Source: Octopus sinensis
Lineage: Eukaryota
Reading direction: 5' to 3'
NCBI RefSeq assembly: GCF_006345805.1
Contig: NC_043008.1
Coordinates: 34,720,001-34,784,000, forward strand
Length of the DNA: 64,000 nt
Position 1 is the stretch's first letter. Every line of letters begins with the position of its first letter. A program made the translations under genes and the position numbers. This document shows, one piece after another, positions 13,984-49,283 of this stretch. The notes under the pieces were generated by a model that saw nothing but the letters and a program-made list of their open reading frames with translations, ran no database searches and had not been told where the DNA came from.

Positions 13984-14022
<39 letters not shown>

Positions 14023-14535: not shown

Positions 14536-15468
14536 ATGGAAATGGAAACACACAGAACCAACTTTGCATTCATAACAGTCAACTTCATCTTTTCTTCAAT
14601 TGGTGCTTTAATGTGTTTTATTTCACTTGTGTACAAACTTTGCAAGGGAATATCTTTACCAAAATTGTGGAAATATTCTATTTGTTTACTTGATACTTCA
14701 GCATTATTCTTTGGAATTGGTCTGGTGATGCATCTGTGTATTTTAGTACTCAATGGTACAACTCCCAAATTCCTTGTGTTGGCATCATCGAGTTTAATGT
14801 TGTTTGGATATATGGATGGTTTGTGCTCCTTTATTACATTCCAGACAATTCTATTATTTGTACAGAATCCGAGAAAGATATCCAGTACATCAAGCCATCA
14901 GCTTGGTTCCTCAATAATAGTACTTACTGGTATAAAACTTGCTTGTCTGCTCCTTTCTATTTTGCCAGTCATTCCTAAACAAGACCAACTCAAACCTTCC
15001 AGGAGCAATCTCTTCCCTCTTTATGACCCAAAAGAATCTGGGGGTACTTACACTTCTCTGTTAGTAATTTGCTTCTGGATAGTCATCGTGACCACGTTTA
15101 TTTTCAGTATTATTGGATTAGTGAAATCCCAGAAAAAAAACAGCTTGGTACATGATTCCAGTGAAGATGTCCATGTTTCTGTAATATCACAGGGACAGTT
15201 ATTACACAAAATACTCCTGGTCGAACAATGTATCTATACTATCGTAAGTATCATGATAACACGACTACTTTTTCGGCAATCCGTTTCACAGACAACCAAC
15301 AATGACCATGACACATCAATTATCACAGTTAGCATTTATCTCACACTCCATGGAATTTTCACTAACCTTGGCAATTTTCTGTGGATGAAGAAAGAATGTT
15401 GTGGAAAACCAAGTGACATTTCACAGGAATCTCGTCAACTAAAACGACTGGAACTCTTACGAACTGAG
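14536..15468 (+). CDS. 7TM-pseudokinase exon 1 (aa 1-311): seven hydrophobic segments, divergent GPCR-like domain
   Basis: ORF track 14536..15531. Hydrophobic runs at about aa 10-33, 47-72, 79-109, 125-146, 172-196, 226-246 and 262-283. NGT sequon in predicted ECL1; KECC after TM7. Donor GAG|GTAAAA at 15468/15469, phase 0. An in-frame TGA at 14500 lies upstream of the ATG. Confidence 0.85.
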
Positions 15469-16440: not shown

Positions 16441-19179
16441 TACTGGGTCACTCTGATCTTAGTGGACAAGACCTTTTGTGATTTGTGTTTGCATTATTTT
16501 TTTAGTGTGCATATTCCATAATATAGGTGTATGGCTTCCAGTACATGAAATCTATCTGGATGATAGATTATTTAATCAGTTACCTAATTAACATCATCAC
16601 AACCACCACCACCACCACCCAACTGGCCCTTGGTTACCTTTAGTGGAATGCACTCATTCACAAATATCTGAATCAGGTCTCCAGCATAAAGGTAACTTTA
16701 TTTTTTTTAGTTTCGAAAGTCATGTAAAAAGTTATGGGTACTGTCTTCCTCTTCTGACTAAAAACTTTGAATAGTTTGGTTAATATATTCTTTTTGTGAA
16801 GGCACGTGGTTAAGTGGTTAGGGTAATCAGCTCTGATTGTAAGGTCATGAGTTCAATTCCTGGCAGAGCAAGACATTTTTTGATTTCATGTTGCTCCAGT
16901 CTACTCAGTTGGCAAAAATGAGTTGTACTTGCAATTCAAAGGACAGACCTAGTCCATTTGGTATCATCTTTTTTTGTTTTATTTTTAATACTTCCTGTAA
17001 ATTCTCTTTATAGCTGTTATTTCTGATAACAGAAATAGGTTGCTTTTTTTTTCTATCTTTCTTCATATTTTATAACTATTTACATTAGTTCCCCATTTGT
17101 TATTTACAATATATATTTGTAATCCAATAGCAGATATTTTATAATAATTTTATAACTGCTGACAACCTCTGCCTCTTTGTACTTATGGGAATATGCATTA
17201 CTTCTTAGTCAGATACTGGGTGATGTCTTCCATATGCATTCATTATTTTACCTGTTTTGTTTTGACAATTCACTTGACCTCCTGTTGAAAATATAACTAT
17301 AACTTATTACGAGTGTAGCTAAACCTTCAATACACAGTATCTTAACATTCACTTTCATTTTAAGAGTAATCTACTACGTCCCTAACATCCTTTACCAATT
17401 GTTTTCTTCCATTTTTTAAAACTCCATCTACCACATTTTTCAGTATAGAAGTCACTGAAGTATATAGTGTAAACATGTAAATATCATCCCTATCTTATCA
17501 AATCCTTCTGTATTTCGCATGGAAATATTGGTCCTCCAGATTTTTGTTCTTTTGGTTGTAAATTTTGATCTGAAAAATTCAACTTGTTTACCAGAAAATA
17601 GAGTACTCTTTTACTTGTTTCAGTCATTTGACTGCAGCCATGCTGGAGCACCACCTTTAGTCGAGCAAATCGATCACAGGACTTATTCTTTGGAAGCCTA
17701 GTACTTATTCTATCAGTCTCTTTTGCTGAACTGCTGAGTTACGGGGGACGTAAACACACCACCATCGGTTGTCAAGCGATGTTGGTGGGGACAAACACAG
17801 ACACACAAACATATACACACACATACATATATACATATATACGACGGGCTTCTTTCAGTTTTCATCCACCAAATCCACTCACAAGGCTTTGGTCGGCCTG
17901 AGGCTATAGTAGAAGATACCTTCCCAAGGTGCCACGCAGTGGGAATGAACCTGAAACCATGTGGCTGGTAAGCAAGCTACCTACCACACAGCCACGAATT
18001 CATTAAATTCTAAGTATTTGTAAGAATTTAATTTTTTTTACTCCATCTCGTTCATTATTTCTCGAGTATTTGTAAGTTTGTATTTGGCCTAGATCTGTTA
18101 TCATAATTTCTGAATCTAACATGGTATTACTAATCACATTAATTCTCCACTCTTTAAAGTAGCTTTGGTTTATTTTCCCAAACTGAATTTCATGCCATTT
18201 CCCCTTATAAAATCTTTTTCATGTTTGTCATTTGCAGCACACAACTTGAGGCCATCAAGAGACCATTGATTATCTCCACTCCATAGCATTTTTATCTGCT
18301 TCCACTGTAGGTGCATGGCTTAGTGGTATTTGACTCACAATCATAAGTTTGTGAGTTTGATATCCGGTAGAGCATTGTGTCCTTGGGCAAGACACTTTAT
18401 TTCAAGTTGCTCCAGTTCACTCAGCTGGCAAAAATGAGTAGTATCTGTAAATCAAAAGGCCAGCTTTGTCACATGCTGTGTTACGCTGAATCTCCCTGAG
18501 AACTACACCAAGGGTACATATATCTGTGGAGCGCCCAGTCATATGTGCGTTAATTCCATAAGCAGGCAGTGCCATTGCTCAGATCAACAGGAACCCTTAT
18601 TGTTGTAACAAACAGTGTGTCAGTTTAACAAATTGGTTAAAGAGTATAAGTTCCAGAAAGAAAAGAAAAGAAAGAAGAGTAAGATAAAAAGAGAGAGATA
18701 GAGAGTCCTTTTGGAATATTTCCTGTGACAGAGACTAATTTTTTTCACAGATCCCTATTTTGATAAGATCTGTTTTAATGTCTTCTGTTAATCATGGCAT
18801 GTTTTATTTACCTGGTTGTTATTAATGCTACCTTACTCATAACTAATATCATGAATTTACAGGTAAAGAAGATAGTGAAAAGCCCACAGTTAATCACTAA
18901 GTAACATGCTCAGACCATTCTTTCCTTTACAACGGTTTTGAATTATGATTTTGATTTTTGTTATCAGGTATACATTTGCATGAAACTTTTCAGCATCTTT
19001 TCTGTTTTACTGGGTGTGCACCTATTTTTTATAATTAGATTGTCATTAAAGGTTTTTACATTAACAGGAAGCAGGTTATGACCAAGAAGTTTGCGAGGAT
19101 TTTGAGGAATTAGAATGTCTCCCTTTATGAAGCTAGGCTCATCCTAACAAGAAACTCTGAAAGTGAAAAACACCCAATT

Positions 19180-21904: not shown

Positions 21905-22146
21905 CACTCTGGTAAACATCACTTCTTAGCTTCTTGGATCGACAACAAGAAATTCCTTCAAACAGGTCTAATGAAAACCTACAGTCAAAATTGGCAGAAA
22001 CTGTGGGCACAAGAAATCATGGTTCTTGGAATGTTACGAAAGGTGAAACACCCAAATCTATTGCAGTGTCTTTGGACAAGCAACACTAACCCTTATTATG
22101 AAATTGTTTCTTTACTCAGTCAAGATACAGTTTCTAGTGATTCAAG
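21905..22146 (+). CDS. 7TM-pseudokinase exon 2: kinase N-lobe (HSGKHHFLASW...GLMKTY...WAQEIMVLGMLRKVKHPNLLQCLW)
   Basis: Acceptor ttgttattttacag|CAC (phase 0), donor TCAAG|GTATTG (phase 2). Contains the beta3 Lys (21974-21976), the alphaC Glu and an HPN-like subdomain IV. Confidence 0.88.
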
Positions 22147-22214
22147 GTATTGCTGTTTTTATTATTCTACCAAATAAAATAATAATGATAATAATAATGA
22201 AATTATTGTATACA

Positions 22215-22455
22215 GTACTCAGGTGCACCACAACTTGTCAAAAGTGTGTATAAAGCATATGCAGTAATGTACAAATGTCTGGAAAGTGAACAGTGTATGA
22301 GTCAGATACATGCTTGCGTGTGTATGGAGGGGAGAAAATCAGGTGTAGTGTTGGTGAATCTCAGGAAGCATCGAAGTTTTGAAGGATGCTGTGCTCCGAC
22401 AACTAATAACTGATGCCGGCAGTTTCTTCCATACTTCAGCAACTCTTGTCATGAA
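22215..22455 (-). mobile_element. CR1/L2-type LINE 3' end
   Basis: Minus translation resembles RVAE.WxKLPASV.SC...SFKT. Same family as 50640-50860. Confidence 0.6.
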
Positions 22456-23164
22456 ATAAAAAAACCCCACCAAAGATTCAGGTACATCTATTACACACTA
22501 GCAGTCACTATATGCAACACACTACTATATACTACATACTAACACCCCAATGCAGTCATGGGTAAACTGCAAGCTGTGGGGCTCTCTGAATAGCATGCCA
22601 AATGAAACATTATGTTCAATTTATTTAGTTGTGCAGTCCACCCTGATGATGAACCATGTCTCATGTGGCCTGCTTCTCAAAAAAGGTTACCCATGCCTAA
22701 CCTAGTGCAACGGTTAATAGACTATCATTTACAATACACCACTTCCATTTACAACACTACCAACATAAATATTGCTTTCAAATTTTGGCATAAAGCCAGA
22801 AATTTCAAGGAAGGGGTTAAGTTGATTACATTGACCCAGTGCTCACAGTGCTCAACTGGTTCTTATTTTTATTGACCCTGAAAGGATGAAAAGGAAAGTT
22901 GACCTTGGCAGAAATTGAACTCAGAAAGTAAAAATTAGCAAAATACCACTTAGCATTTTTCCTGGCATGCTAACAATTCTGCTAACTCACCACCTTGTAT
23001 CAACATAAATACTACCACAATATACAACATGCTATCACTATATGAAATGTACAGGCACAGCATCAATTTTCTGCAACCTTTGGTTCCATAGTCATTCTGA
23101 ACAACTGATTTTTCCAAACCAGCAGTAGTTATACTCTAAATTGAACAAATATTAAATTTACTTA

Positions 23165-23581
23165 GGCGCAAGAGTGGCTGTGTGGAAAGTAGCTTGCTTA
23201 CCAACCACATGGTTCTGGGTTCAGTCCCACTGCGTGGCACCTTGGGCAAGTGTCTTCTACTATAGCCTCAGGCCGACCAAAGCCTTGTGAGTGGATTTGG
23301 TAGTCGGAAACCGAAAGAAGCCCGTCGTATATATGTATATATATATATGTGTGTGTGTGTATATGTTTGTGTGTCTGTGTTTGTCTCCCCCCACCCCAAC
23401 ATCGCTTGACAACCAATGCTGGTGTATTTGCATCCCCATAACTTAGAGGTTTGGCAAAATAGACCAATAGAATAAGTACTAGGCTTACAAAGAATAAGTC
23501 CCGGGGCCGATTTGCTCGACTAAAGGCAGTGCTCCAGCATGGCCGCAGTCAACTGACTGAAACAAGTAAAAGAGTAAAAGG
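23165..23581 (+). mobile_element. SINE family A copy (intron 2)
   Basis: Colinear with 301-705. Confidence 0.85.
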
Positions 23582-24538
23582 TAATTAAATGAAATACAGG
23601 TACATTATTATAAATAACACAATTTTATCAATTTAGTACCATGCAAGGTACCAGTAGACTAGTCTGGCAGCTGCAGGAATCTGAAGTTTCTGTTCATATA
23701 TTAGTGAAGATTATGAGTTTCCAGATCACCAAAATCTGAAAAGTCGGTGTTCTACCTGTACTAATATATACAAAATTCTACTACCATCTACCACAAAACA
23801 TTACCACCTAATGCAAAATATGCTACCAGTATGTACAACACTCTATTATTATGTACAGCACATTAGCACCGTGTACAACACTTTATTCCTATATATAGAT
23901 CACAACCACCACATGCATCACGCTACGTACAACACCCTACTAACAAGTACAATACAATAAAAAAAATGATAAACATCGCCCTTTTCAAGCCTAGCCAGGC
24001 TTATGGGCCTGGTTTCCAGTTTCTGTGGCGTATGTGTTCCCCCCAGCTGGACGGGACGCCAGTCCCATCGCAGCATTACTCAAGAAACAGGAAGAGAGAG
24101 TGAGAGAAAGTTGTGGCAAAAGAGTACAACAGGGGTCACCACCACACCCTGCCGGAGCCTTGTGGAGCTTTTAGGTGTTTTCGCTCAATTAATACACACA
24201 ATACCCGGTCTGGGAATCAAAACTGCAAGTTTGCTGCCCTAACCACTGGGGCATTGTGCCTCCAGAACAAGTACAATACACAACATACTCAATGTACCAC
24301 CTAATGCCATACAGTACCGCTATGAACAAATATTTTTATGTGTTGTACTTTAATGGTAGTGTGTTGTATATTGTTTATGTTAGTAGTGTATAATATGTGG
24401 TAGTAGTGTGTTGTGTGTACAGTGATAGTGGTTTGTATATCTCTACCCTCTTCATAATTTATTGATTGTATCATTATTTAAAAACATTTTTATACTATAT
24501 TAAACAAAGAATAAAATTTATTCTATTTTGCTTTTAAG

Positions 24539-24734
24539 GATTATCTGCATGGAATTTCCTGAATATGGATGTCTACGGGAATATCTTAAGAGTATGGAAA
24601 CTCCACTGTCTGCAGCAACACAGTGTATGATTATAAGCGATGTATCACAAGGTCTGCAACAGCTACACCGGCTCGACATTCTGCACAAACATCTCTCTTC
24701 AATCAGAGTTTACCTTCGAGGCAACAATGGGAAT
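24539..24734 (+). CDS. 7TM-pseudokinase exon 3: hinge and catalytic-loop region (IICMEFPEYGCLREYL...ISDVSQGLQQLHRLDILHKHLSSIRVYL)
   Basis: Acceptor ttttgcttttaag|G (phase 2, completes AGG Arg), donor AAT|GTAAGA (phase 0). Clear subdomain V-VIb pattern with HKH at 24684-24692 in place of HRD. Confidence 0.9.
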
Positions 24735-24802
24735 GTAAGATGTTTAATATTTTACAGAATTTTTTGCAAAAAAAAATGTAAATTTGTTTTATATTTGTAA
24801 GA

Positions 24803-25220
24803 CTCTTTACTCTCTCTTTACTCTTTTACTTGTTTCAGTCATATGACTGTGACCATGCTGGAGTACCACCTTTAGTCAATCGAGCAAATCGACCCCAGGA
24901 CTTATTCTTAGCCTAGTACTTATTCTATCAGTCTCTTTTGCTGAACCGCTAAGTTACAGAGACGTGAACACACTACCATCGGTTGTCAAGCAATGTTGGG
25001 GGGGACAAACACAGACACGCAAACATATACACACACATACATATATATACATATATACGACGGGCTTCTTTCAGTTTCCGTCTACCTAATCCACTCACAA
25101 GGCTTTGATCGGCCTGAGGCTATAGTAGAAGACACTTACCAAAGGTGCCACACAGTGGGACTGAACCCGGAACCACGTGGTTTGTAAGCAAGCTACTTGC
25201 CACACAGCCACTCCTACACC
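24803..25220 (-). mobile_element. SINE family A copy (intron 3)
   Basis: Reverse complement is colinear with 301-705. Confidence 0.85.
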
Positions 25221-25655
25221 TACCTCATTACTTGAAACCACTTCAATTGACTGCCATCCTTCATTCTTACATCGTCCTATTCATTCACATTTTACATTGA
25301 TTACTCCACTTTTCTATGTTATAAAATTACATCACCCTCTATCTTTCCACTGAATAAAATCAGACTATAGGAATTTAACTCAATTCCATTATAATTGCTG
25401 AAGTATTGCAGATGAAATGTTAATAGCCCTATCCAAATCTCACCCTTCCCTAGATCTTTTAGCACTAGGAGGAGTATACCTTAGTATATCACAAGCTTTG
25501 CTACTCCTATTCACACATACAAATGAAGAATACAGTGTCATTCTTGCGTTTCATATGTAAGTGTTATATATAGAGATAAAGAATTTCTGTGTGTAGACAT
25601 ACCCATAATTACCATATGATGATGATTAAGCATGAAATTATTTCTTTCATTTCAG

Positions 25656-28208
25656 AATTCGTTGTTTCGTGCTGCCCTTGGGGATTTTGAATATGTAAGC
25701 ATATTTGGGTCTCTACTACAAGGAGCAGATAACCCAACATGTAAGAGTCGTCAAACATTCTTCCTTCCGGACATTCGATCTTTCGCTCTGATTACTCTGG
25801 AAATGATTCTGTCAGTATGTGACAAATTAGTCCAAATGCCAAAAAAGAATCGATATCAAAATGTAAAGACACAGAAGTCTAATCCACAAAGTATATCTGA
25901 TGCAATGTTCAACAAGGCAACTCAGTGGCAACCATTAGTTAAACCCGAGAATAAAACTGTTGTAAAGGGTAAATTGGGTTTTTTTCCTACGGCAAGTGAA
26001 GAGAGTTTACATAAGAACTGGAGTGAAATGAATCCAAATTCATTAGATAAAAGTAAAATTCCTCAGACACAGCAAAGAATAAAAACAATTTTTGTAGCTC
26101 CGGCTAATAATGCAAACATTGTGCCATCAGAGTTTTCTACAGGATTTTCAAGGCATTCTTCAATTTCACCTGGAAATGAAGATTCCCTTAGCAGCAACAT
26201 CTCTATGCTTGTAGAAGCTGGGAAGGATAGTGACAGTGAAATCAGTCCAACTGAATTCAATGACTTTATTTCACCATATGAAGATAACAAACAAGATGAC
26301 TTTATCTCAGAAAATAAGTTCATTGATAGGAAAACATCAATAGATTCTGATCCTTATAATTATCACTGGAGCTTTTTCACAAATAAACATAATTATAGCC
26401 CTCACAGCTTCTTTTTCAATGAACAATTCTCTAAAAGCTTTTCTGAAGAAAATAATTTAAACACACCAGAAAGTAGTAAAGATGACACACATATGAGTGG
26501 TGAAACAGCAGCTTTTCATGAGAAAATTCAGAGCCACCCAAGGAAAGATGTCAATAACATAGTTGATCAAGATTATATTTCAGAAGAAAATCACTTGAGA
26601 AAAGTTCAGAGAAAGAATAAAGCAAGAATGAATTTACAGAAAACACTGACTTCTCGAGGAATGGCTTTTAATAATGTTTCATCTCAAAAACAAATAAAAG
26701 ATACCTTTAAAAAAAAGAAACAATTTAATGATACACAGTCTCAAAAACCATCTCTAACTCATATTAATTCTTCTAATTCAGTATTGCCAGGGAATAAAAC
26801 CATTCTTTCTAATCCTAATAACCATTGTAGACCTTTTAATAATAAAGTCAACAATGAGTTCAGGGAAAATACAAATGATTATCAGTTCAGTTGTTCCAGC
26901 AGTTATCAAACCAACAACAGCTCTGATTTGGAATCATCTCAGAATTTTTCTTGTGATTACACTACTGATATATCTTGTCTTTCTTCAGCAACTGAAGCTT
27001 TAACTCGAAAAATTCTAAGGGAAGAAAAGTCATTATTTCAAAGGAATAATTCAGCTGACGATATACACAGGAAAATCATTGACAGTGGTTTTGAAACGGA
27101 ATCTAATCCTTCCAACACTTCTAACCAAATAATATGCCATCACAACTCTGAGAAACAGCAATGGCTGGAGAACTGCTTTGACATGAAAACAAAAGAGGCG
27201 GAATTCTTACCAAGTTCAGATGATTATTTATATATATCTAACAATAATTTCAGTATGCAAAAGAAATCATGTTTAATGTCCAACCAAGATAGTCCCATCT
27301 ATAGTCCTTCAAATAAGAGCAGATTTGTTTATCCAACATCGAGAAATGGTAATAGTTGTTCAAGAAGTGATGAAGTATTTGAGACAAGTTCTTATAGAGC
27401 CTATGATAACAAAGTTAGTAATTCTGAACTTCCATTAATGAAATCTGAATTACAGAATAGCAACAATGCTTCAAAACGATACAGAGAACTTAAACGTAAA
27501 GGTGTACCACTGAAAATATCAATTGTGTCATCAAATACTTCTTCAAATTTTAACCATTTCTCAAACTGTTCACCCAGTATATCAGCATGTTCAGAAGTCA
27601 CAACACCGGACATGGATTCCAAAAACATATTTTTCCCTCAACAAATGTCACCATACTCAACAAACGAGCATTATGATAGAACATATGATGATTACCAAAG
27701 AAAAAATAGTGCCAGTTTATTTAAACAATCACTTGGAGACAGCCCAGTATTTACAACTAAAGTAATTGGCAGCCCTTGCCCACCCACACCAACAACTACT
27801 ATCCCTAGCTCTCTATTCATGACAACAGAGAGACCAATCCTTGAATCTCGTATCAGTTGTAGTGACGTTCCAGATTTTGGTGGGAACTGGAAAATTGGAC
27901 CAAAAGGGAACAATGTGCAAAATCAAGACACAATTTCAGTTCCCAGTCGGCAATTGAGTCGACTTAACAGTGGAAGTTTATCTCACTGCTCCTCTTTATC
28001 TCACCTCAGTTTGCCAGGGAAAACCATTCAAGGAAAATACAAACTTTTACCTGGAGTAAATGAACATCATCTGGGTTATTGCATTGATCTAGTGGAAAAA
28101 CAATCCTTCCTCTCTATAGATGATTTATTACCTGCTTCACAAAGTGCCTTTAATCATCTTAAAGACAAGCTCAGTGCAACAGGTGAACTAACAAATGCAG
28201 CTAAACAG
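25656..28208 (+). CDS. 7TM-pseudokinase exon 4 (851 codons): DFE motif, alphaF-like PDIRSFALITLEMI, then a long Ser/Asn-rich low-complexity insert
   Basis: ORF track 25632..28262. Acceptor tttcatttcag|AAT (phase 0), donor CAG|GTAAGG (phase 0). AALGDFE (DFE at 25683-25691) matches the AKIGDFG position. Confidence 0.9.
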
Positions 28209-28824
28209 GTAAGGAACTTTGTAAATCTTATAACTCTTCTAGCATTTATCCTGCTTGTGTAGGGTTCACTTATTCTACTAATATATATAGATGTTGGTTC
28301 AATCAATGTATCATTCAGTCTGATCTGTGAGGCCTGTCACCACCAGTCATGCCTTGCAGGACCCGTTTCTCACCATAAGGAGGTCACCACTACGAGGCAG
28401 ATTCTGAACTCAGAATGCAAAAAGCCATTTCAGGTATCACAAGGAATCTTGTTCAATGCTGTAATAATTCCTCCTTCACTGCCTTTGTGTTTTATTTATT
28501 AACCCCCAAACAGATAAAAAGCAAAGTTGATCTCAGTGGAATTAGAACTCAAAGAGCACAGAAATCTGTAACAAATGACCTCATAGTATTTTATCAAATG
28601 CTGTATGATCCCTGAAAAATCACTAACTTTGATTTATATAAAAATTAAATTTGCTTTGATTGTGTTATAAACAGTTGAAGTTGACAAAGTAATGTTACTG
28701 TAGTGACACACAGAGGCTTAGTGATGAATGGGATGGGTGAGTGGGGGAATCTGTTTTCTTTTTCCTGGGTGGAGGTGTTAAAAGCACAAAATTCTTTCTA
28801 TCCATCTATTTTCCATCTTCTCTG

Positions 28825-29058
28825 TCCATTATTCCTGGAAGGGTTATAAGGATAGAGTCCTATAGTACCTCCTCCATAGGGTCCCATTATTCCTGGAAGG
28901 GTTATGGGGATAGAGTCCTATAGTACCTCCTCCATAGGGTCTCATTATTCCTGGAAGGGTTATGGGGATAGAGTCCTATAATACCTCCTCCACAGGATCC
29001 CATTATTCCTGGAAGGGTTATGAGGATAGAGTCCTATAGTTCCTCCTCCATAGGGTCC
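28825..29058. repeat. Minisatellite, 4 x 58 bp
   Basis: cattattcctggaagggtta... recurs at 28827, 28885, 28943 and 29001. Confidence 0.95.
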
Positions 29059-31070
29059 TATCAGAATCCACCTTCATTTGATTTTTTGGTTGAATTCTCA
29101 AGTATAACCAACTGAGACTATGGATATTATCCATTCATCTCATTCTTGGTCTACCCTAGGTCACCTGCAGGTTGGCTTGTCTTGAAGAATCTGTTCTGCT
29201 ATTCTTTCCTGTAACTTTTTTTATCACATGTTCATAGCACTGGAGCTCTTTCAGTCATTACTCAATATTCATGACCATAGATGAGGATAAGCATGAAAAG
29301 TGAATTGAAGACAACAACTTTGGCTTTTTTACCAACCTCTTCTCTCCTGAGAATCGAATGCTGGATCTGGTGCATTATTATGCTAGCAACTGTAATCCTA
29401 GCATCCAATTAAGCCTCTTGCCTTCCATCTCTTATGAATAAATCCCCAAGAAACTTAAAATCTCATCTTGCCTTAGTGGTGTTCCACTAATATGCAGAGG
29501 GCACTGAGATGAGTTTCTTGAGAGGATCAATGTCTCAGTCTTTGAAATACTAATTCTCAGCCCTGCCTTACAGCACTCAGCATTGAACCTGTTCAATATA
29601 TCTTGCAGATCACCATCTAATGACCCAAGTAGCCCCATACCATCTGCAGATATCAGCTGCTTGGTCCTACATTCATTGATTGTGATACCACTTCCATAAT
29701 GGCTGCACATGCTAATCCAGTTTATAAAAATTATGAAAAGGTGAAGTGACATTACACACACTAGCCAAAGTTCAACGCCCACGTTAAAGGGTTTTGGCAT
29801 AGCACCATTTACCCAAATTCAGACAAATGGGCATTTATGAAGGAACTTAAAAGCAACCACAAGTTGCCCATTAATCCCAAACTCTTGTAAAACCCTCCAC
29901 AGCATGTCCTGTGATACCTGGTCATATGAGTTTTTGAGGTCTACAAAGTAAGTGTACACCTCTTTTAATAGTCCCATGATTTCTCAAAGACCTTCCATAG
30001 AGTGATTACCTGGTTAGTTGTGCTGCTTCCAGGATGGAAACCACACTGTTCTTCAGCAAGCTTTGGGTTCAACAATTTCCCTACATTTCTTTTCCAGATA
30101 CCTAGTGTAAATTTTACCAGGAAGACTCAAGGAGAGGATTCTTCTATAACTAGAGCACTCATTCATGTCCCTCTTTTTAAAAATTGGGATTATCATCCTG
30201 GATTGCCATTGCTTTGGTATCTTTCCAGAAGTCCAAACCACCTGCCTTACACAAATCAATCAGAGAATATCTTTGATATTTAAAGCTGTTAACATCTCAG
30301 GTCAAATTTAATCTTCTCCAATGGCCTTACTGTGTTTGAGCATTTTAATCACTTCTATAACTACAGTGTCTTTGAGGTTAGTCTTCACTCCTTGATGTAC
30401 TTCGTATCCACCAGAAGATTTTATCATGACCAGATTTAAGAGGTCAGCAAGGTATTCTCTTTACCTCTTAAGAATGCACCTCTCTGCAGAGAGAACTCCA
30501 TCCTGGTTCTTAATGGTATGTGTGGGATAAGACTTCTTGGGCGTAACTTCGGTATACGTACCGGAAGTACCGGATGCATTTCAGCGAAATGATTTTTTTT
30601 ATATATATGGGGGGTTAGGGTTGGGGTTTGTGTTAGGGTTAGGGTTAGGGTTAGGGGTGGGAGAAAAGGGTTTCTGTTATCTTCAGAAATGTAAACAAAG
30701 CCACTTCCGGTACTTACAATACGTATACTGAAGGATCACCGACTTCTTGTTATGAAATTGGCAGATGGTTTGCCAAAATACTTTATTGGCCAATCTAAAA
30801 TCAGAACCCAGCTTAAACCCAAAGTCCTTAAAAACTTTTGGCACCTCAGTGTACTGCTTGTGCAAAAGAGATTTGTTTCCAAGCCAAGCTTTGTAAGTTC
30901 CCTTCTTTGCTCAGTTGGCATTTTTAACTTCCTGGTTAAATCAGGGGTTTCTTTTGTCACCCGGTGTCACATTGAGTTGCTTTCATCCTCAGCATTTTAC
31001 AGCCAAAGAATAAACTACCAACAAAGCAATCTCCACTCCATTTTGACATCCTCAGTCAGTTTCTGAATCT
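29050..31070 (-). mobile_element. Decayed RTE-like LINE reverse-transcriptase region in intron 4 of the 7TM gene
   Basis: ORF-track pieces 30053..30259 (IPKQW..MIIPIFKK.D..ECSSYR.I.L.SLPGKIY) and 29432..29800 (LISADGMGLL, the YADD position; GL.IS.SKT; FLG). Frameshifted. Confidence 0.85.
30540..30740. mobile_element. Merlin-like MITE with internal TTAGGG repeats, inserted into the LINE
   Basis: 9-bp direct repeat gacttcttg at 30531-30539 and 30741-30749. TIRs begin GG (ggcgtaacttcggtatacgt / revcomp ggtgatccttcagtatacgt). Confidence 0.75.
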
Positions 31071-31313
31071 GGATGCAACAGTGACTGCACATTTCCTCCT
31101 TTACATAATTATGCCTGTTAATTACAAGGTGAGCAAGTTAAATATGTCTTTGTCCCCAAGCACTGAAAACCTTTGCTATGCCACTGAATACGCACATGGT
31201 AGTGGCAATGGTAGTGGTGGGGACGATGGTAGTGGTGTTGATATTAATGGTCATAGTAGTACTGTTAATGATGGTCGTGAAACTAAGTGTTGGGAGTAAT
31301 TCTTGCTGGTAAA

Positions 31314-31440
31314 AGCAGTAGCAGCAGCAGCAGCAGTAGCAGTAGCAGTAGTAGTAGTAGTAGTAGCAGCAGCAGCAGCAGCGGTGTTGGTTGTGGTGGT
31401 GGTGGTGGTGGTAGCAGTGGTGTTGTTGCTGGTGGTGATA
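31314..31440. repeat. Mixed (GCA/GTA/GGT)n trinucleotide repeat
   Basis: Direct reading. Confidence 0.9.
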
Positions 31441-34400
31441 CGAGAAGGTTGATCATGGATGAATAACACTAATTTCCTCTCTTTTTTTAGCATCATGGAT
31501 ATATGCTGAGTATAATGTATAATAATCAGTTGTATATAGCTCAGTATTTATAACAACAACAACAACAATCATTCTTTCTACTTTAAGCACGAGGCATGAA
31601 ATTTTGGGGTAGAGGTTAGTTGATCCCATCAACCCCAATGCTCTACAGGTACTTATCTTTATTGACCCTGAAAGGATAAATGATAAAGTTGACCTTGAAC
31701 TTAGAATGTAAAAGCCATAACTAAAAATTGTATTAATCCTTTCTACTAAAGGCATGACATTTTTGAGAGGGGACCAGTTCATTACATTGACCAACAGTAT
31801 TTCACTGGTACTTATTGACCCCAGAAGGATGAAAGGCAAAGCCAGCCTCAGCAGAATTTGAACTCAGAACATAAGAACAAACGGAATGCCGTGAAGCTTT
31901 TTGCCCAGTGTGCTAACAGTGTGTGTGTGTGTTCCTGATGCATTTGAAAACTGAGTTGCCGGTTTTGATGTATGGGGAGTCAAAAGATTCAGTAATCTTT
32001 TGGCTACCAAATAAACTTTATTTTCATTTACATATTTTCTATGTTATCTCAGCAACCATTTATAGTTATTTGAAAGACACTAATAAAGTCTAATCCACAA
32101 AGTATATCTGATGTAATGTTCAACAAAGCAACTCAGTAGTGCTAAAAGATCTAGGGAAGGGTGAGATTTGGATAGGGCTATTAACATTTCGTCTGAAATA
32201 CTTCAGTAATTATAATGGAATTGAGTTAAACTCCTAAAGTCAGTGATTTCATTCAGTGGAAAAGTAGGGGGAGAGGTAATTTTATAGCATAGAAAGGTGG
32301 AGTAATCGATGTAAATTCAGTAATGAAATAGGCTTCATTAGAAAGTGAAAGTAGCTTCACACTTTCAATTTGAACAAAAATTACAAAGTATTGCATTACA
32401 AGAGTGACAATGTGTGAATAATGAAAGTAATATTTTTCAGAATTAGTCACTTACTACAAGACATCCATTTCTCTATATGTTATGAGAAAATACAGTCACT
32501 CACTCTCTCTCTCTCATGCACACATACATACAAAAAAATATTTATGTATGTGTATATGAAAGATAATATGTGTATGTGTGTGTGTGTGTGAGAGAGAGAA
32601 AGAGAGAGCGTAATTGAGTGTCACACATACATGCAAAAGAATACATACATGACAACACACACCTTCACTCACTCATTTTCTCTCTCTCCTCTCTCTCCTT
32701 CCCCTCTCTCTCTCTCTCCCACATGCACAAGCGCGCACACACACACACATCCATTCCATATACACTCTCTTTCACTTTCTGCTCTCACTTCAAAGCAAAT
32801 GTCACCTTTCCACTTTCTCCTCTCTTCAAAGCATAAAGAAATAAAAAATTTTTACAGAAATAAACGAACAATCATTTGATTCCATATGATCGACCATATG
32901 ATCAAGTTGACAACTTTGCTGCTTCAAATGAATGCCATAAAATAACTTCCTTTCACAGATACACACACATACACCCCCACCCACACACAATAGGTAAAAC
33001 CTCTGTACAAATTATGCTATTTCTTGCTGTGTGTACATATAAAAATTACAGCTCAAATCCAATTGAAATGATCTTTTTCTATTCTGTAATTCATATTTGT
33101 GATGAGCATATTTAAAAACCTGTTCTTTGCTATAAACTTAAAAGGAAGTTTTCCCAGAAATCCTGTCCTTTACCTGTTATTTCTAGCATGTCCAAGGTGA
33201 CATTTGTGCTCCCTATCCTTATCTTTTCCTAAATTTCTTCCGATTCCTGTTTTCGATATAGAAAATCAGTATTTCACCCAAAAATATGTTCTCAATATAT
33301 TTTCTCCCTTCTGACCCCAATTTCTTCATTTTTTTACTTTTTTCCAAATTTTTTCTTGGTAATCCACAGAGAAAAAACAAAGTATGAATCTTTAAGAATT
33401 TTCTTTTTCCTTTTTTCTTAAAGAAACACTAAAATCTCCTTCTCAAACATCCACCCATCACCTCACCACTTTCAAAAAGTTACAAACTCCCAATGTTCCA
33501 CTTTTAGCTATTTGGAAAGCTAGAAAGTTTCTTCAGAATAAATGTCGTTTACCTGTTGTTTCTAGCATGTCAGGTTTTCTGGTGTGGGAGGTTTTAGCTT
33601 TTTGAAAGTGGGTAGGTGATGGGTGGGTGAGGCGAGGGAAGGGGTATTGAGCATTTCTTTAAGAAAAATTAAACTTTTAAGCATAAATATATTTCCTAGA
33701 TTTGTAATGTTTTTCTACGTGGGTAAAAAAAAAAAATTTGAAAAACTTACAAATTAAGAAATTGCAATGGGGACAGGGGGAAATTAAAATTTTGAAAATG
33801 TGATTTCTGAGCAAAATTGTTATATGATGAAATAATACATAATTTGTGATCCTTCCTAAGAACAGAACGCACTTTCATGCAAATCTATGCAAATTGTACC
33901 CTCCCTCGCTTCACTTTTAAACAAACAATAACTTCCATTATGCCAGTAATCTACTTCACTATATATCAGCTGTGCCAATTCTACCCATAAGAAAAGAACG
34001 AATAATACAATGTGACTGTAAGTCATAACACTTGGGCATAAAACTAACTATTTATCATCTGTAGATTATTTTTAAGTAACCACTAATTTCAATATAAATA
34101 TGAAGTCTTTAGTATGTTGTTGTTTTCTATATAATTGTAGGCATATTTTAGTTGTCAAATGATAAAGAACAAAGATTTATTCAATTAATTGCTACTTGTA
34201 ATTAATTATAAAATTGAACATTTATCTTCTGCTGATTTTTCACAACAACCTCTAATTTTAATATAGATATGAACTTTTTAATATAAGCAACCTCAGATAA
34301 GCTGGATTTTAAAAGAGATAATATAAATTATAGGCCAATCTAAAATCAGAACCCAGCTTAAACCCAAAGTCCTTCCAACTTTTGGCACCTCAGTGTACTG

Positions 34401-34659
34401 TTTGTGCAAAAGAGATTTGTTTCCAAGCCAAGCTTTGTAAGTTTCCTTCTTTGCTCAGTTGGCATTTTTAACTTCCTGGTTAAAATCGGGAGTTTCAAAC
34501 AAGTCATCAGTTTGTCTTGACCAATTATATTCATTAGAAATCAACCACCACTAGCAATATTCCATAATACCCAATGAAGTCATTAAGACACCACAGAGAA
34601 TTCTATTTTCCTTTAGTCAGATTCAGTAGCAGATACACTGAAGTAATTCATTGATATAT

Positions 34660-35260
34660 TGTTGTCATTTTGCTAGTCTTGTTTGGGGCATGCAAATGCC
34701 AAAAATTTTAACAACTTTCACTAAACTGCCAGAAAAAAATTCTCATCATCAGGTGGCAGGATAAAATTTCCAATACTCCTGTGCTCAAAAGAGCTAATAT
34801 ATCAAGTATGTATGATTTCCTAAGCAAATTCCTGGTATGGTGGAGTGAACATGTAATACACATGCTTGACTTCAGACTTTCTAAACAGATCTTCTTTAGT
34901 GAACTAGCATCTGGCTCTCAGTCATGTGGCAAACCACAAGAGAGATATAGAGACATGCTCAAGACAATGTTGAAAAAAGCTCAACTTAAAGTAGTCTGTT
35001 TTGGAACATTTTGTTCATGATCGCTCACTGTAGAGTAGTACTGTGTACTTTTGGAGGCCAGCACTCAGAATGAGTTATGATCAGATAAGCTAAAGAGACA
35101 AGAGCTGCAAGGAAAGCAAAAAAAAAAAAAATCCCACTGGGTCATGACTCTGTTAAAATGTGCCCCTGTTGTAACTGTGGATTTCATGCTGAAATTGGCC
35201 CAGTAAGCCACCTCAGAACCCATAAATTGTAAAGCTGATAATCTGGTTATCTTCAGAGGC
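34660..35260 (+). mobile_element. RTE-like LINE 3' fragment
   Basis: ORF 34781..35020 (W..HV..M.D.RL.KQIFFSEL..G....GKP..RYRD.LK) followed by a C..C..H..H-like finger. Confidence 0.7.
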
Positions 35261-35868
35261 ATGAAGGACAAACCCTAATATTCTTGTTTAGCTCCTGATT
35301 GATTAGAATATAATGAAAAACATCCCAGTTATGATGACCATAACTCATCTTTCCCTTTCTTTTTCTTGATATAAACCTACATTATCCTATATCTCTTTTT
35401 CTTTCTTTTTTTTACCAAGTTGGTATGATGGGGATATGACTGATATTTTTAGCAGGTTGAGAGACTGCTTAGAGGCTCACTCATTGGCATTGGCATATGG
35501 TAAAAATTGATTCCAGTACTACAAGTTAACAATACACTCTCAAGTATAAACCAAAGAGGGAACATCTCTGCAGTCACTCAGCTTGCTAGAAATAACATTC
35601 AAAATATTCCTCAACTCACACCCTACCTTCTTTAATAAAGAAGGACACAACAGACAATGCAGTCTCTGGAAAGCAAAAGAAAGGATAATCACAGCTAGAA
35701 TGCCTTTGACCATAGTTCTGCTTGACCAGAGCTTTAAAAATTGTTAGTTTTATGTTTGGATTAGAAATATGCATCATAAATATATTAATATATTCTACAT
35801 ATGATTGTGTCAGTTTATGAAAATGTTGATATATTCTATATATTCTTTCTGTATTTTTTTTACTGCAG

Positions 35869-35970
35869 TTGATGGACATAGTGGTATCATGCTGGTATGT
35901 TGAATCACCTCCATTGGCAGCTAAACTATGTGAACAGCTGAAGGATCCAGTTATGGAAACAACTGTTTGA
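35869..35970 (+). CDS. 7TM-pseudokinase terminal exon 5: LMDIVVSCWYVESPPLAAKLCEQLKDPVMETTV* (kinase subdomain XI-like plus PDZ-binding tail)
   Basis: Acceptor gtattttttttactgcag|TTG (phase 0). Translation resembles the LYDLMxxCW...LxxxL kinase C-terminus. TGA at 35968-35970 is followed by TAA. Too short for the ORF track. Confidence 0.8.
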   Translation: MMDIVVSCWYVESPPLAAKLCEQLKDPVMETTV

Positions 35971-37991: not shown

Positions 37992-38357
37992 TATATATAT
38001 ACACACATATATATATATGTATGTATGTATGTATGTGTGTATATGTGTATGCATGTATGTGTGTGTGTGTGCGTGTCTGTGCTTGTGATTGTCCTCCACC
38101 ACTGCTTGACAACGAATGTTGGTTTGTTTACATCCCTGTCACCTAGTGGTTTGACAAAGGAAACAGATAGAATAAGTACAATGCTTACAAAAATAAAACT
38201 GGAGTTGATTCATTAAACTACAATTCTTCAAGGCATTGCCCCAGCATGGCCACAGACCAATGGCTGGAAAAAGCAGAAGAATAAAAGAATACATTCTCTG
38301 CTTTGGTCTTATGTTCAAGGCATGAGAAAGCTTGAGTTTACATGAGAAGGCCTAACA

Positions 38358-38836
38358 GACCTGGTAGAAACAGCAGCCAAATCTCCCTCAAATCACACCT
38401 TACTGTCTTATGTATGTATATATATATGAGCCAATGAGGAGGACCTCTACATGGTAGCTAGACCTGGTAGAAATAGCAGCCAAATTTCCCCCAAATCACA
38501 CCTTACTGTCTTATCTATGTATATATGTATGTATGAGCCTATGAGGGAGACCCCTACATGGCAGCTAGACCTGGTAGAAATAGCAGCCAAATTTCCCCCA
38601 AATCACACCTTACTGTCTTATCTATGTATATATGTATGTATGAGCCTATAAGGGAGACCCCTACATGGCAGCTAGACCTGGTAGAAATAGCAGCCAAATT
38701 TCCCCCAAATCACACCTTACTGTCTTATCTATGTATATATGTATGTATGAGCCTATGAGGGAGACCCCTACATGGCAGCTAGACATGGTAGAAATAGCAG
38801 CCAAATCTCCCTCAAATCACACCTTACTGTCTTATC
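38358..38836. repeat. Minisatellite, ~4.5 x 107 bp
   Basis: Identical short ORFs recur at 38451, 38558, 38665 and 38772 (period 107). Confidence 0.95.
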
Positions 38837-41540: not shown

Positions 41541-42258
41541 GACTCTCCAGATGCCTACAAGCATATAAATGTACTTTCGCACAATGCAGTGAGAATGAAT
41601 TTTTATTTGTTTTTATGTTCAGTTATAATCCTTTCTACTATAGGCACAAGGCTTGAAATCTTGAGGGTGGGGTTAAGTCAATTTTTTTGACCCCAGTACT
41701 CAAATGATACTTAATTTATAGACCCTGAAAAGGTGAAAGGCAAAGTCAACCTCAGCAGAATTTGAACTCAGAATGTAAAAGATGGACTAAATGCCACTTA
41801 GCATTTTGCCTGGCATGCTAACGATTCTGCCAGCTCACCTCCTTTTGTTCAGTTATGATAAAAATACAATTTTACATTAATCTGATGAGTTACTCTCAAG
41901 TCCGACAATGGTTTAACTGGCCAAAACTTCGAAGTCACTGCCAACAACATTCTTGTATAATAACAATACATACATATATACATACATACATAACACCTAC
42001 CTACACTACCTACATACCTTCATACAACACACACACATGTATACTCTTTAACTCTTTTATTTGTTTCAGTCATTTGACTGTGGCCATGCTGGAGCACCGC
42101 CTTTAATCAAGCAAATCAACCCCAGGACTTATTTTTTGGAAGCCTAGTATTTATTCTATCGGTCTCTTTTGCTGAACCACTAAGTTACGGGGATGTAAAC
42201 ACACCAGCATTGGTTGTCAAGCGATGTTGCAGGGACAAACACAGACACACAAACATAT

Positions 42259-42291
<33 letters not shown>

Positions 42292-48979: not shown

Positions 48980-49283
48980 GTAAGTTGCCGTCTTGTTATT
49001 GTTCGTCAACCCTGCTTCCTCCCCTCCATCACTCTGCACTGACGTTCTTATGATCGTCCCATATTTCTGGATATTCAAGACTACACTGTCTGATTTTTTT
49101 ATTAATTTATTTATTAAAGTTGTAGGATGTGGTTTGAGGAAAATTTAGTCGCTATTTTTCTTGAGTATTATAAATATAAAGTAAACACTCTTCACAAGGG
49201 AAGCCCTGAAAACGAAGTCCCATAGCAGTTCAAATTCGCGCATAATTATCTCTCTCGATGACATGTTAATCTAGAGCTGTGGT

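What the first reader, a model, noticed from the sequence alone, without database searches (positions are those of the whole stretch)
21905..35970. Kinase domain is catalytically degenerate and split by a ~750-aa insert inside the C-lobe
Seen: the beta3 Lys (GLMK) and alphaC Glu (AQEI) are retained. The Gly-rich loop is lost, HRD is HKH, the catalytic-loop Asn position is Arg (HKHLSSIR), DFG is DFE and no APE is recognisable. alphaF reads PDIRSFALITLEM. The subdomain XI-like helix (LMDIVVSCWYVESPP) lies roughly 790 residues later and lacks the invariant Arg. Between them is a single-exon Ser/Asn/Lys-rich low-complexity region. Established: loss of the HRD Asp defines a pseudokinase. Inference: the fold works as a scaffold or conformational switch presenting a huge disordered loop rich in phosphosites and docking motifs, far longer than typical RTK kinase inserts.
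Basis: partly seen in the sequence, partly recalled or inferred. Interest (0 to 1): 0.7.

Follow-up and report, generated by a model that had tools for sequence, protein, structure and literature searches.

The report
Seven-helix receptor with split dead kinase
The region holds the last four exons of a cephalopod gene for a seven-helix membrane receptor fused to a catalytically dead kinase domain that is interrupted by a roughly 735-residue floppy loop. The layout is conserved from molluscs to amphioxus, and no paper that seven literature searches turned up describes or tests the family.

Summary
Window 21905-35970 (+) contains exons 2-5 of a five-exon gene (exon 1 at 14536-15468). All junctions are GT-AG, in phase, and collinear with an Argonauta protein and with an uninterrupted transcript contig from a related cephalopod.

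The kinase-like domain keeps the beta3 Lys, alphaC Glu and DFG Asp. It has HKH for HRD, Arg for the catalytic Asn, DFE for DFG, one glycine left in the Gly loop, no APE, and no subdomain XI Arg.

After alphaF comes a 734-residue Ser/Asn/Lys-rich stretch. A conserved 85-residue C-terminal block then completes the C-lobe. Evidence: profile-profile alignment runs through the junction (E 3e-29), and AlphaFold2 of the insert-deleted construct gives pLDDT 75 and pTM 0.77.

This is not lineage-specific decay. No lophotrochozoan relative examined has the HRD Asp. Against a closer octopod, omega is 0.13 for the core and 0.30 for the insert.

It encodes a rhodopsin-like seven-helix domain, so this is a GPCR-pseudokinase fusion. 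The family occurs in molluscs, brachiopods, bryozoans, annelids, echinoderms, hemichordates and amphioxus, always annotated as uncharacterized.

The insert carries four conserved short motifs, one like a beta-TrCP degron. The protein ends in a PDZ-type ligand. A scaffold or switch function is inferred, not shown.

The parts
14536..15468 (+). Exon 1, outside the finding's coordinates: 311 aa forming a seven-helix rhodopsin-like domain, ending in a KKECCGK Cys cluster and LKRLELLRTE.
   Evidence: ORF and GAG|GTAAAA donor in phase 0. AF2 pLDDT 79, pTM 0.80 with seven long helices. The top 50 Foldseek PDB hits are all class A GPCRs. Collinear with the Argonauta protein.
21905..22146 (+). Exon 2: the kinase N-lobe. 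It holds the degenerate Gly loop (EHSGKH), the beta3 GLMK (21965-21976), the alphaC AQEI (22007-22018) and beta4.
   Evidence: Acceptor ttttacag|CAC and donor AAG|GTATTG in phase 2. The Lys and Glu are invariant in the 13-sequence alignment of mollusc and Lingula members.
24539..24734 (+). Exon 3: beta5, hinge, alphaD-alphaE and the catalytic loop HKHLSSIR (24684-24707).
   Evidence: HMMER alignments to ITK, MLKL, LIMK1 and TYK2. Pfam PK_Tyr_Ser-Thr E 1.4e-8.
25656..25850 (+). Start of exon 4: GDFEY (DFE at 25683-25691), a shortened activation segment without APE, and alphaF PDIRSFALITLEM (25767-25805).
   Evidence: hhalign to canonical kinases. LIMK1 alphaF alignment.
25851..28052 (+). The insert: 734 aa, Ser/Asn/Lys-rich, hydrophilic and poorly conserved. 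It lies in the same exon, between alphaF and the C-terminal block.
   Evidence: Composition and hydropathy. No Pfam domain. Omega 0.30 against a closer octopod. Length varies from 696 to 1355 aa among mollusc members.
26613..26648 (+). Conserved island 1 in the insert: KNKARMNLQKTL (basic; [RK]x[KR]ARxxL[KQ][KR]xL).
   Evidence: Conserved in all 10 mollusc sequences aligned.
26973..26996 (+). Conserved island 2 in the insert: SCLSSATE (SxLSSxA[DE]).
27069..27107 (+). Conserved island 3 in the insert: RKIIDSGFETESN. The DSG-hydrophobic-x-S/T pattern resembles the beta-TrCP phosphodegron.
   Evidence: Invariant DSGF[DE][ST] in all 10 mollusc sequences. DSG-phi-x-S is also present in Antedon and Saccoglossus, and a looser DSGxxT in Owenia. 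The degron reading is an inference from the published consensus.
27465..27527 (+). Conserved island 4 in the insert: NASKRYRELKRKGVPLKISIV.
   Evidence: This is the longest conserved block inside the insert.
28053..28208 (+). End of exon 4: the first part of the conserved C-terminal block (GVNEHHLGYCIDLVEKQ...LLPA...FNHLKDKL...). It contains a family-specific helix plus the alphaG equivalent. The donor is CAG|GTAAGG.
   Evidence: Family alignments. hhalign places canonical alphaG on FNHLKDKL. Omega 0.135. The donor is conserved in a second octopod.
35869..35970 (+). Exon 5: LMDIVVSCWYVESPPLAAKLCEQLKDPVMETTV plus the stop codon. This is the alphaH-alphaI (subdomain XI) equivalent with PP in place of RP. 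The C-terminal ETTV (35956-35967) is a class I PDZ-type ligand.
   Evidence: Acceptor tttttttactgcag|TTG in phase 0. hhalign to the canonical CW..P..RP motif. The ends ETEL, ETEV or ETTV are conserved in molluscs.

Best explanation
**What it is.** Window 21905-35970 holds exons 2-5 of a five-exon gene (14536-35970, + strand). The gene encodes a protein of about 1341 aa built from these parts:
- an N-terminal rhodopsin-like seven-helix domain;
- about 20 residues later, a tyrosine-kinase-like pseudokinase;
- a disordered loop of about 735 residues that leaves the C-lobe after helix alphaF;
- a conserved 85-residue block that returns to supply helices alphaG-alphaI;
- a C-terminal PDZ-type ligand (ETTV).

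**Shown here.**
- The gene model.
- The motif degeneracy: HKH for HRD, Arg for the catalytic Asn, DFE for DFG, no APE, and no subdomain XI Arg. The beta3 Lys, alphaC Glu and DFG Asp are kept.
- The age and conservation of the whole layout across bilaterians.
- Purifying selection on every part.

**Inferred.** The domain cannot transfer phosphate in the canonical way. It acts as a receptor-tethered conformational switch or scaffold.
- A change in the seven-helix bundle would be read by the directly attached N-lobe.
- The insert is a flexible hub. Its four conserved short motifs, including a DSGFxS degron-like site, and its many Ser/Thr would recruit partners and control turnover.
- The PDZ ligand would anchor the protein to submembrane scaffolds.
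- Nucleotide binding may persist, because the Lys, the Glu and the DFG Asp are conserved in every lophotrochozoan member examined.
For: **Gene model.** GT-AG junctions with matching phases. Collinear with Argonauta hians GAB1606126.1 (74% identity), whose genomic locus has the same five exons. Collinear with an uninterrupted 1309-aa ORF on a 4263-nt transcript contig that runs from the seven-helix domain to ETTV.

**Kinase identity and degeneracy.** Pfam. PDB HMMER alignments to ITK, MLKL, LIMK1, TYK2 and LRRK2. Family alignments.

**Split fold.**
- hhalign of the 17-sequence insert-deleted profile against 15 canonical kinase domains: Prob 99.8, E 2.7e-29, query 39-295 on template 50-270, crossing the junction.
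- The C-block profile alone hits the alphaH-alphaI motif with score 22.2, P 0.0077. The reversed control scored 13.7, and 1 of 30 column shuffles reached the observed score.
- AF2 gives pLDDT 75 and pTM 0.77, with 65-78 in the C-block.
- The Foldseek top hits are all protein kinases, over 311-343 columns.

**Selection.** Omega is 0.13 (core), 0.30 (insert) and 0.135 (C-block) at dS 0.24. Against Argonauta, pN is far below pS.

**Seven-helix domain.**

**Conserved islands and PDZ end.**

**Distribution.**
Against: - No RNA from this species was available, so the junctions rest on relatives.
- Only one of the five AF2 models reached pLDDT 75. The others scored 45-59, and the alignment had only 13 rows.
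- I could not inspect coordinates or PAE. The Foldseek TM-scores (0.56-0.68) do not by themselves prove that the C-block superposes on alphaG-alphaI.
- HMMER searches against Pfam and PDB never extend past alphaF.
- The C-block-only profile hit is modest, P about 0.01-0.03.
- Disorder was judged from composition and hydropathy only.
- The degron, PDZ and scaffold readings are motif-level inferences.
- The seven-helix domain lacks the DRY, NPxxY and CWxP motifs, so G-protein coupling is unknown.
Confidence: 0.75

Rival explanations
1. The kinase-like domain really ends after alphaF. The conserved C-terminal 85 residues are a separate small helical module, for example a dimerisation or PDZ-presenting unit. 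On this reading the long region is a linker, not an insert inside the fold.
For: HMMER against Pfam and PDB stops at alphaF. The C-block has four to five helices where a canonical C-lobe tail has three. Four of the five AF2 models were poor. From established knowledge, helices that flank the PEAK-family pseudokinases form a separate dimerisation module.
Against: Profile-profile alignment with default settings runs collinearly through the junction onto alphaG-alphaI. The C-block alone lands on the CW..P..RP motif at the expected place. It lands on the same region of an unsplit Nematostella kinase-like protein, P 0.024. pTM 0.77 indicates one compact domain. From established knowledge, a kinase fold lacking alphaH and alphaI would expose its alphaE/alphaF core.
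Confidence: 0.13
2. The domain is a weak or atypical active kinase that uses non-canonical residues, as has been argued for HER3, CASK or WNK. The insert would then be a regulatory, autophosphorylated segment.
For: The beta3 Lys, alphaC Glu and DFG Asp are conserved in all lophotrochozoan members examined. The Saccoglossus relative keeps HND...N. H-x-N loops occur in HER3 and in JAK JH2 domains, which bind ATP (established knowledge). The TYK2 JH2+JH1 chain is the top profile hit in PDB.
Against: The catalytic Asp and the Mg-binding Asn are both absent in all lophotrochozoan members examined. The Gly loop keeps one glycine. The DFG Gly is lost. The APE/P+1 substrate platform is missing.
Confidence: 0.07
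3. The degenerate motifs reflect recent decay of a gene that is dying in this lineage, or the five-exon model wrongly fuses separate genes.
For: the search for homologous proteins returned nothing for the kinase part. One insert slice has omega 0.72.
Against: Omega is 0.13-0.30 overall. The same degenerate motifs occur in bivalves, gastropods, brachiopods, bryozoans and annelids. Exon 4 is an 878-codon open frame. A single transcript ORF in a relative spans the seven-helix domain, the kinase, the insert and the C-block.
Confidence: 0.02

Closest known systems
Pseudokinases with Asp-to-Asn in the HRD motif: HER3/ERBB3 (HRN), JAK-family JH2 domains (HGN), MLKL (mouse HRN)
   Same: Tyrosine-kinase or TKL-like fold. 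The catalytic Asp is replaced (family consensus HNN, HRN or HGN; HKH in octopods). The beta3 Lys is kept. These are the best PDB sequence hits: MLKL for the single sequence and TYK2 for the profile.
   Different: This family has also lost the catalytic-loop Asn, the DFG Gly, the APE segment and the subdomain XI Arg. It is fused to a seven-helix domain and its C-lobe is split. It has no MLKL four-helix bundle, no FERM-SH2 module and no EGFR-type ectodomain.
Kinases with long inserts inside the kinase domain
   Same: A long, poorly conserved, disordered segment with conserved motifs interrupts a kinase fold that re-forms around it. Examples are the PDGFR/KIT/VEGFR kinase insert (about 70-100 aa), plant RLCK XI (199-527 aa, called 'exceptionally long' in PMC9992409), and, from my own knowledge, Greatwall/MASTL (about 500 aa) and SRPK1 (about 250 aa).
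   Different: Those inserts lie between alphaD and alphaE, within the activation segment, or between the lobes, and their hosts are active kinases. Here the insert follows alphaF (between subdomains IX and X) and is 734 aa. It reaches 1355 aa in a relative, and the host is a pseudokinase.
GPCR-kinase fusions ('GPCR-bigrams')
   Same: [quoted passage not shown] Examples are GPCR-TKL in oomycetes and amoebozoans, GPCR-TKL/K and GPCR-TK in choanoflagellates and sponges, and a passing mention of sea urchins (PMC6033456, PMC12716839, PMC10463195). PMC12716839 states that none has been functionally characterised.
   Different: Those kinase domains were described as kinases, not pseudokinases, and no split C-lobe was reported. 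[quoted passage not shown] Homology to any of those families was not tested here.
Receptor guanylyl cyclases (kinase-homology domain)
   Same: A membrane receptor whose juxtamembrane pseudokinase relays a conformational signal (established knowledge).
   Different: Those receptors are single-pass, with a cyclase output domain downstream. Here there is a seven-helix input, and the only outputs are the pseudokinase, the insert and the PDZ ligand.

Membership tests
Eukaryotic protein kinase-like superfamily (Pfam PK_Tyr_Ser-Thr PF07714 / Pkinase PF00069) | Score above the curated cut-off for the family profile | tested here: met
   PF07714 scores 34.8 bits against a cut-off of 23.1, E 1.4e-8, but only over profile positions 62-133 of 258. 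PF00069 scores 24.4 bits, below its cut-off of 31.7.
Eukaryotic protein kinase-like superfamily | Bilobal kinase fold | tested here: met
   AF2 of the insert-deleted construct gives pLDDT 75 and pTM 0.77. At least 1999 Foldseek PDB matches have E<=0.001, and the top 50 are all protein kinases. hhalign to canonical kinase domains gives E 2.7e-29.
Pseudokinase (sequence definition) | Lacks at least one of the beta3 Lys, the HRD Asp or the DFG Asp | tested here: met
   The HRD Asp is replaced by His (HKH), and by Asn or Arg in relatives. The Lys and the DFG Asp are retained.
Pseudokinase (biochemical definition) | No phosphotransfer activity | not testable with these tools
   Needs purified protein and kinase and ATP-binding assays.
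Class A (rhodopsin-like) GPCR | Seven-helix fold superposable on class A receptors | tested here: met
   AF2 gives pLDDT 79. The top 50 Foldseek hits are all class A GPCRs, including CB2, S1PR1, MC4R and LPA1, with TM-scores between 0.27 and 0.72; the low values are those normalised by the length of much longer target chains.
Class A (rhodopsin-like) GPCR | Pfam 7tm_1 above its cut-off | tested here: not met
   The window's exon 1 has no Pfam hit at E<=10. The Diadema relative scores 27.8 bits against a cut-off of 30.5, E 2e-6. Lingula has E 0.62.
Class A (rhodopsin-like) GPCR | DRY (TM3), CWxP (TM6) and NPxxY (TM7) motifs; TM3-ECL2 disulfide | tested here: not met
   Reading the sequence against the predicted helices: TM3 ends ...ILLFVQNP, TM7 reads ...TNLGNFLW, and TM6 has no CWxP. 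The TM3 and ECL2 cysteines are present in non-cephalopod members but both are absent in cephalopods.
MLKL family | N-terminal four-helix bundle executioner domain before the pseudokinase | tested here: not met
   The N-terminus is a seven-helix membrane domain. The similarity to MLKL is limited to beta5 through the catalytic loop.
GPCR-TKL/K or GPCR-TK families of choanoflagellates, sponges and oomycetes | Seven-helix domain followed by a C-terminal kinase domain in one protein | tested here: met
   Gene model, Argonauta protein and transcript ORF.
GPCR-TKL/K or GPCR-TK families of choanoflagellates, sponges and oomycetes | Sequence homology of the seven-helix and kinase domains to those families | not tested
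   None of their sequences was in hand. None of the 30 named hits is from those groups.

The most novel reading that the evidence does not exclude
This may be the first recognised bilaterian-wide family of rhodopsin-like receptors that signal through a covalently fused, split pseudokinase and a giant disordered hub, rather than (or besides) through G proteins. On this reading a single ancient fusion was kept for over 500 million years in molluscs, brachiopods, bryozoans, annelids, echinoderms, hemichordates and amphioxus. It was not seen in vertebrates or ecdysozoans among the hits I could name.
Probability: 0.45. Interest if true: 0.8.

Novelty: new variant of a known kind. Interest (0 to 1): 0.68.

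Why it matters
Pseudokinases, kinase inserts and GPCR-kinase fusions are each known. Their combination was not found in the literature I could search.

Features of the combination:
- a rhodopsin-like receptor wired directly to a dead kinase;
- a C-lobe opened by a 700-1350-residue disordered loop;
- conservation from octopus to amphioxus.

[quoted passage not shown] It adds that no GPCR-kinase fusion has been functionally characterised.

What the family offers:
- a natural system for asking how a seven-helix bundle can drive a kinase fold directly;
- a case for what a kinase fold does when only its shape matters;
- an extreme example of how much disorder a kinase C-lobe tolerates.

It is also a candidate orphan receptor class in cephalopods and other marine invertebrates.

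Tried and rejected
1. The word-indexed protein search with the kinase part returned no hit. The exhaustive search was needed.
I aligned the deleted window construct to full-length relatives instead.
3. HMMER against Pfam and PDB, with a single sequence or with the family profile, never aligned the C-terminal block. Only profile-profile comparison did.
4. dN/dS against Argonauta and against the decapodiform-like transcript was unusable as a ratio, because pS was 0.75 or more in most regions. It was replaced by a closer octopod with dS 0.24.
5. A regular expression meant to estimate the chance of the CW motif in six frames was mis-specified and did not even match exon 5. It was discarded.
6. Alternative donors for exon 2 (22042, 22105, 22129; all phase 0) were rejected. 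They do not match the phase-2 acceptor of exon 3, and the relatives read ...SSDSR|IICMEF.
7. The internal TAT|GTAAGC site just after DFEY was considered as a donor that would make the insert intronic. It was rejected because the frame stays open for 878 codons, because omega is 0.30, and because the transcript of a relative includes the insert.
8. P0047 and P0051 have an intact HRD and DFG, but they are single-pass receptor kinases and not members of this family.
9. The RT-like ORF in intron 4 (29432-29800, minus strand) had no Pfam hit.
Full report
**1. What is in the sequence**

The window is eukaryotic: about 36% G+C, with microsatellites, SINE-like repeats and transposon debris.

Canonical splice sites with matching phases give this model:
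- exon 1, 14536-15468
- exon 2, 21905-22146 (donor AAG|GTATTG, phase 2)
- exon 3, 24539-24734
- exon 4, 25656-28208
- exon 5, 35869-35970 (including the stop codon)

The conceptual protein has 1341 residues. Exon 4 lies in an 878-codon open frame. That is the longest in the window, where the mean stop-to-stop run is 16 codons, so P is about 3e-23. The insert is therefore coding sequence, not an intron.

**2. The gene model is supported by relatives**

An exhaustive HMMER search of 1.84 billion representative proteins found 72 proteins at E<=0.001.
- The best is Argonauta hians GAB1606126.1 (1302 aa, 74% identity), labelled 'uncharacterized protein LOC115217889'.
- The next is a 1309-aa protein (68% identity). 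It is encoded as one uninterrupted ORF on a 4263-nt contig assembled from run SRR27666064, which means a transcript.
- Both are collinear with the model across all four junctions, including ...NAAKQ|LMDIVV....
- The Argonauta genomic locus has the same five exons with the same phases, and introns of 1647, 2078, 916 and 508 bp.
- A second octopod's exon 4 is 86% identical and keeps the CAG|GTAAGG donor.

No RNA from the window's own species was available. The organism is an octopod cephalopod; the exact species was not determined.

**3. The kinase domain is degenerate**

Pfam PK_Tyr_Ser-Thr matches above its cut-off (34.8 bits against 23.1, E 1.4e-8), but only over beta5 to the catalytic loop. 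The nearest solved structures by sequence are:
- for the single sequence: MLKL, ITK, LIMK1 and ABL;
- for the family profile: TYK2, LIMK1, LRRK2 and RAF.

Motif by motif:
- The alignments place ILHKHLSSIR on vIHRDLAARN. The HRD Asp is His and the catalytic Asn is Arg.
- hhalign against 15 canonical kinase domains places GDFE on DFG and PDIRSFAL on the alphaF motif. It finds nothing at APE.
- The Gly loop keeps one glycine (EHSGKH).
- The GLMK Lys and the AQE Glu are invariant in the alignment of mollusc and Lingula members. In the wider set only Diadema differs, with Gln at the Lys position.
- One profile alignment put the canonical Lys five residues upstream, at a position that is Gln in the octopus. 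The beta3 Lys assignment therefore rests on invariance and on the AlphaFold strand.

**4. The degeneracy is ancient and selected**

- In bivalves, gastropods, a brachiopod, a bryozoan and an annelid, the loop is HNN, HRN, HGN or HSR, and DFE is invariant.
- Among the deuterostome relatives, only Saccoglossus keeps Asp (HND...N), and it has DFT for DFG.
- Against the closer octopod (dS 0.24), omega is 0.13 for the kinase part of exon 4, 0.135 for the C-block part and 0.30 for the insert. Slices of the insert range from 0.15 to 0.72.
- Against Argonauta, dS is saturated but pN is far below pS in every region.

Lineage-specific decay is excluded.

**5. The C-lobe is split**

After alphaF come 734 residues (window 25851-28052).
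- Composition is S 16.1%, N 10.4%, K 7.8%.
- The stretch is hydrophilic and has no Pfam domain.
- It is biased rather than repetitive. Window entropy is 3.49 bits against 3.69 in the core, and there are no tandem repeats.
- Its length varies from 696 to 1355 residues among mollusc members.

The last 85 residues are as conserved as the core, and they sit at the extreme C-terminus in every full-length member.

Evidence that this block completes the fold:
- (a) With default settings, hhalign of a 17-sequence insert-deleted profile against canonical kinases gives one collinear alignment. It covers query 39-295 on template 50-270 (Prob 99.8, E 2.7e-29). It crosses the junction and places FNHLKDKL on alphaG and QLMDIVVSCW..PP...LCEQL on the alphaH-alphaI motif l..l...C....p..RPt..e....l.
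- (b) The C-block profile alone hits that same motif with score 22.2, P 0.0077. The reversed control scored 13.7, and 1 of 30 column shuffles reached the observed score.
- (c) The block aligns to the C-terminal helix region of an unsplit Nematostella kinase-like protein that still has RP, P 0.024.
- (d) AlphaFold2 of the insert-deleted construct gives pLDDT 75 and pTM 0.77, with five helices after alphaF and pLDDT 65-78 in the block. All top Foldseek hits are protein kinases over 311-343 columns.

Weaknesses:
- Only one of the five models was good.
- I could not see coordinates or PAE.
- HMMER never reaches the block.

I put about 0.85 on the split-fold reading. The helix HHLGYCIDLVEKQ has no canonical counterpart and seems specific to the family.

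**6.

Exon 1 encodes seven hydrophobic helices followed by a Cys cluster.
- AlphaFold2 gives pLDDT 79 and pTM 0.80.
- The top 50 Foldseek hits are all class A GPCRs.
- Pfam finds nothing in the window's exon 1. The Diadema relative reaches 27.8 bits on 7tm_1 against a cut-off of 30.5.
- The DRY, CWxP and NPxxY motifs are absent.
- Lophotrochozoan and deuterostome seven-helix profiles align over 273 columns (Prob 97.6, E 3.5e-12).

This points to one ancient fusion.

**7. Distribution of the family**

Named members come from these groups:
- Mollusca: Argonauta, Pinctada, Argopecten, Solemya, Potamilus, Patella, Lottia, Biomphalaria, Plakobranchus, Candidula
- Brachiopoda: Lingula
- Bryozoa: Watersipora
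- Annelida: Owenia
- Echinodermata: Antedon, Diadema
- Hemichordata: Saccoglossus, Ptychodera
- Cephalochordata: Branchiostoma

All are 'uncharacterized', or are mislabelled LRRK2 or RXFP2. None of the 30 hits I could name is from a vertebrate or an ecdysozoan. The other hits are unnamed.

**8. Conserved motifs in the insert**

Four islands are conserved across cephalopods, bivalves and gastropods:
- KNKARMNLQKTL, 26613-26648
- SCLSSATE, 26973-26996
- RKIIDSGFETESN, 27069-27107
- NASKRYRELKRKGVPLKISIV, 27465-27527

The third island fits the beta-TrCP phosphodegron consensus DSG-hydrophobic-x-S, which I know from the literature. Such DSG motifs recur in Antedon and Saccoglossus, and in a looser DSGxxT form in Owenia.

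The C-terminus is ETTV, ETEL or ETEV in molluscs, and S/T-x-hydrophobic in several deuterostomes. That fits a class I PDZ ligand. These functional readings are inferences.

**9. How it most likely works**

*Shown:* a receptor-like seven-helix domain, a fused kinase fold without the canonical catalytic residues, a tolerated giant loop, and a conserved tail.

*Inferred:* the fold is a non-catalytic switch or scaffold tethered about 20 residues from helix 7. The loop and tail would recruit partners, control turnover and localise the protein.

Retention of the Lys, the Glu and the DFG Asp leaves nucleotide binding open. The rival explanations are listed separately with their weights: a separate C-terminal module, a weak atypical kinase, and decay or a gene-model artefact.

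**10. Comparison with what is known**

- GPCR-kinase fusions are reported in oomycetes, amoebozoans, ciliates, choanoflagellates and sponges, with a passing mention of sea urchins (PMC6033456, PMC10463195, PMC12716839). [quoted passage not shown]
- Long kinase inserts are known. One example is plant RLCK XI, at 199-527 aa between subdomains VII and VIII, called 'exceptionally long' (PMC9992409). Others, from my own knowledge, are the RTK inserts of about 70-100 aa, Greatwall/MASTL and SRPK1.
- I found no description of a bilaterian seven-helix pseudokinase family, or of an insert after alphaF of this size. Seven literature searches were run.

**11. Verdict**

The object is a new variant of known kinds, with an architecture that had not been noticed and that is wider than the finding itself.

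Noticed in passing
window 14536-15468 (+): Exon 1 of the same gene encodes a rhodopsin-like seven-helix domain, so the pseudokinase is the cytoplasmic part of a GPCR-like receptor. The fusion is conserved from molluscs to amphioxus.
   Followed up: yes
window 14536-15468; relatives P0001 and P0002 compared with P0003-P0009 and P0018: The cephalopod members lack both the cysteine at the top of helix 3 and the cysteine in extracellular loop 2. All other family members keep both. This is a paired loss of what looks like the class A disulfide.
   Followed up: partly
relative P0053/P0094 (Saccoglossus kowalevskii), residues about 373-400: This deuterostome member keeps an HND...N catalytic loop (Asp and Asn both present) but has DFT for DFG. 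Degeneration therefore differs between branches of the family.
   Followed up: partly
window 48780-48980 and 61532-61858 (+), probably continuing to 64000: The next gene downstream on the same strand is a Spartan (SPRTN) homologue. SPRTN_ZBD scores E 3e-25, and there is a weak SprT-like hit.
   Followed up: partly
window 38357-38837: A tandem array of a 107-bp unit, 4.5 copies at 95% identity. It stays open in one reading frame across the copies.
   Followed up: no
window 28826-29058 (intron 4): A tandem array of a 58-bp unit, 4 copies at 93% identity, inside the 7.7-kb intron between exons 4 and 5. The same intron is only 508 bp in Argonauta.
   Followed up: no
window 13838-14071, 17738-17968, 23198-23467 (-), 24945-25184, 42199-42426: A SINE-like element with an internal CA/TA microsatellite recurs many times in both orientations, including in the introns of this gene. 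It was seen in the open-frame list.
   Followed up: no
window 2564-2779 (+): A remnant of a Tc1/Tc3-type transposase (HTH_Tnp_Tc3_2, E 1e-8), broken by stops.
   Followed up: no
proteins P0012-P0016 (310-333 aa; P0012-P0014 confirmed as unnamed Logan contigs): Short proteins match only the seven-helix part (E 1e-24 to 1e-33). They may be exon-1-only gene calls or stand-alone receptor paralogues.
   Followed up: no
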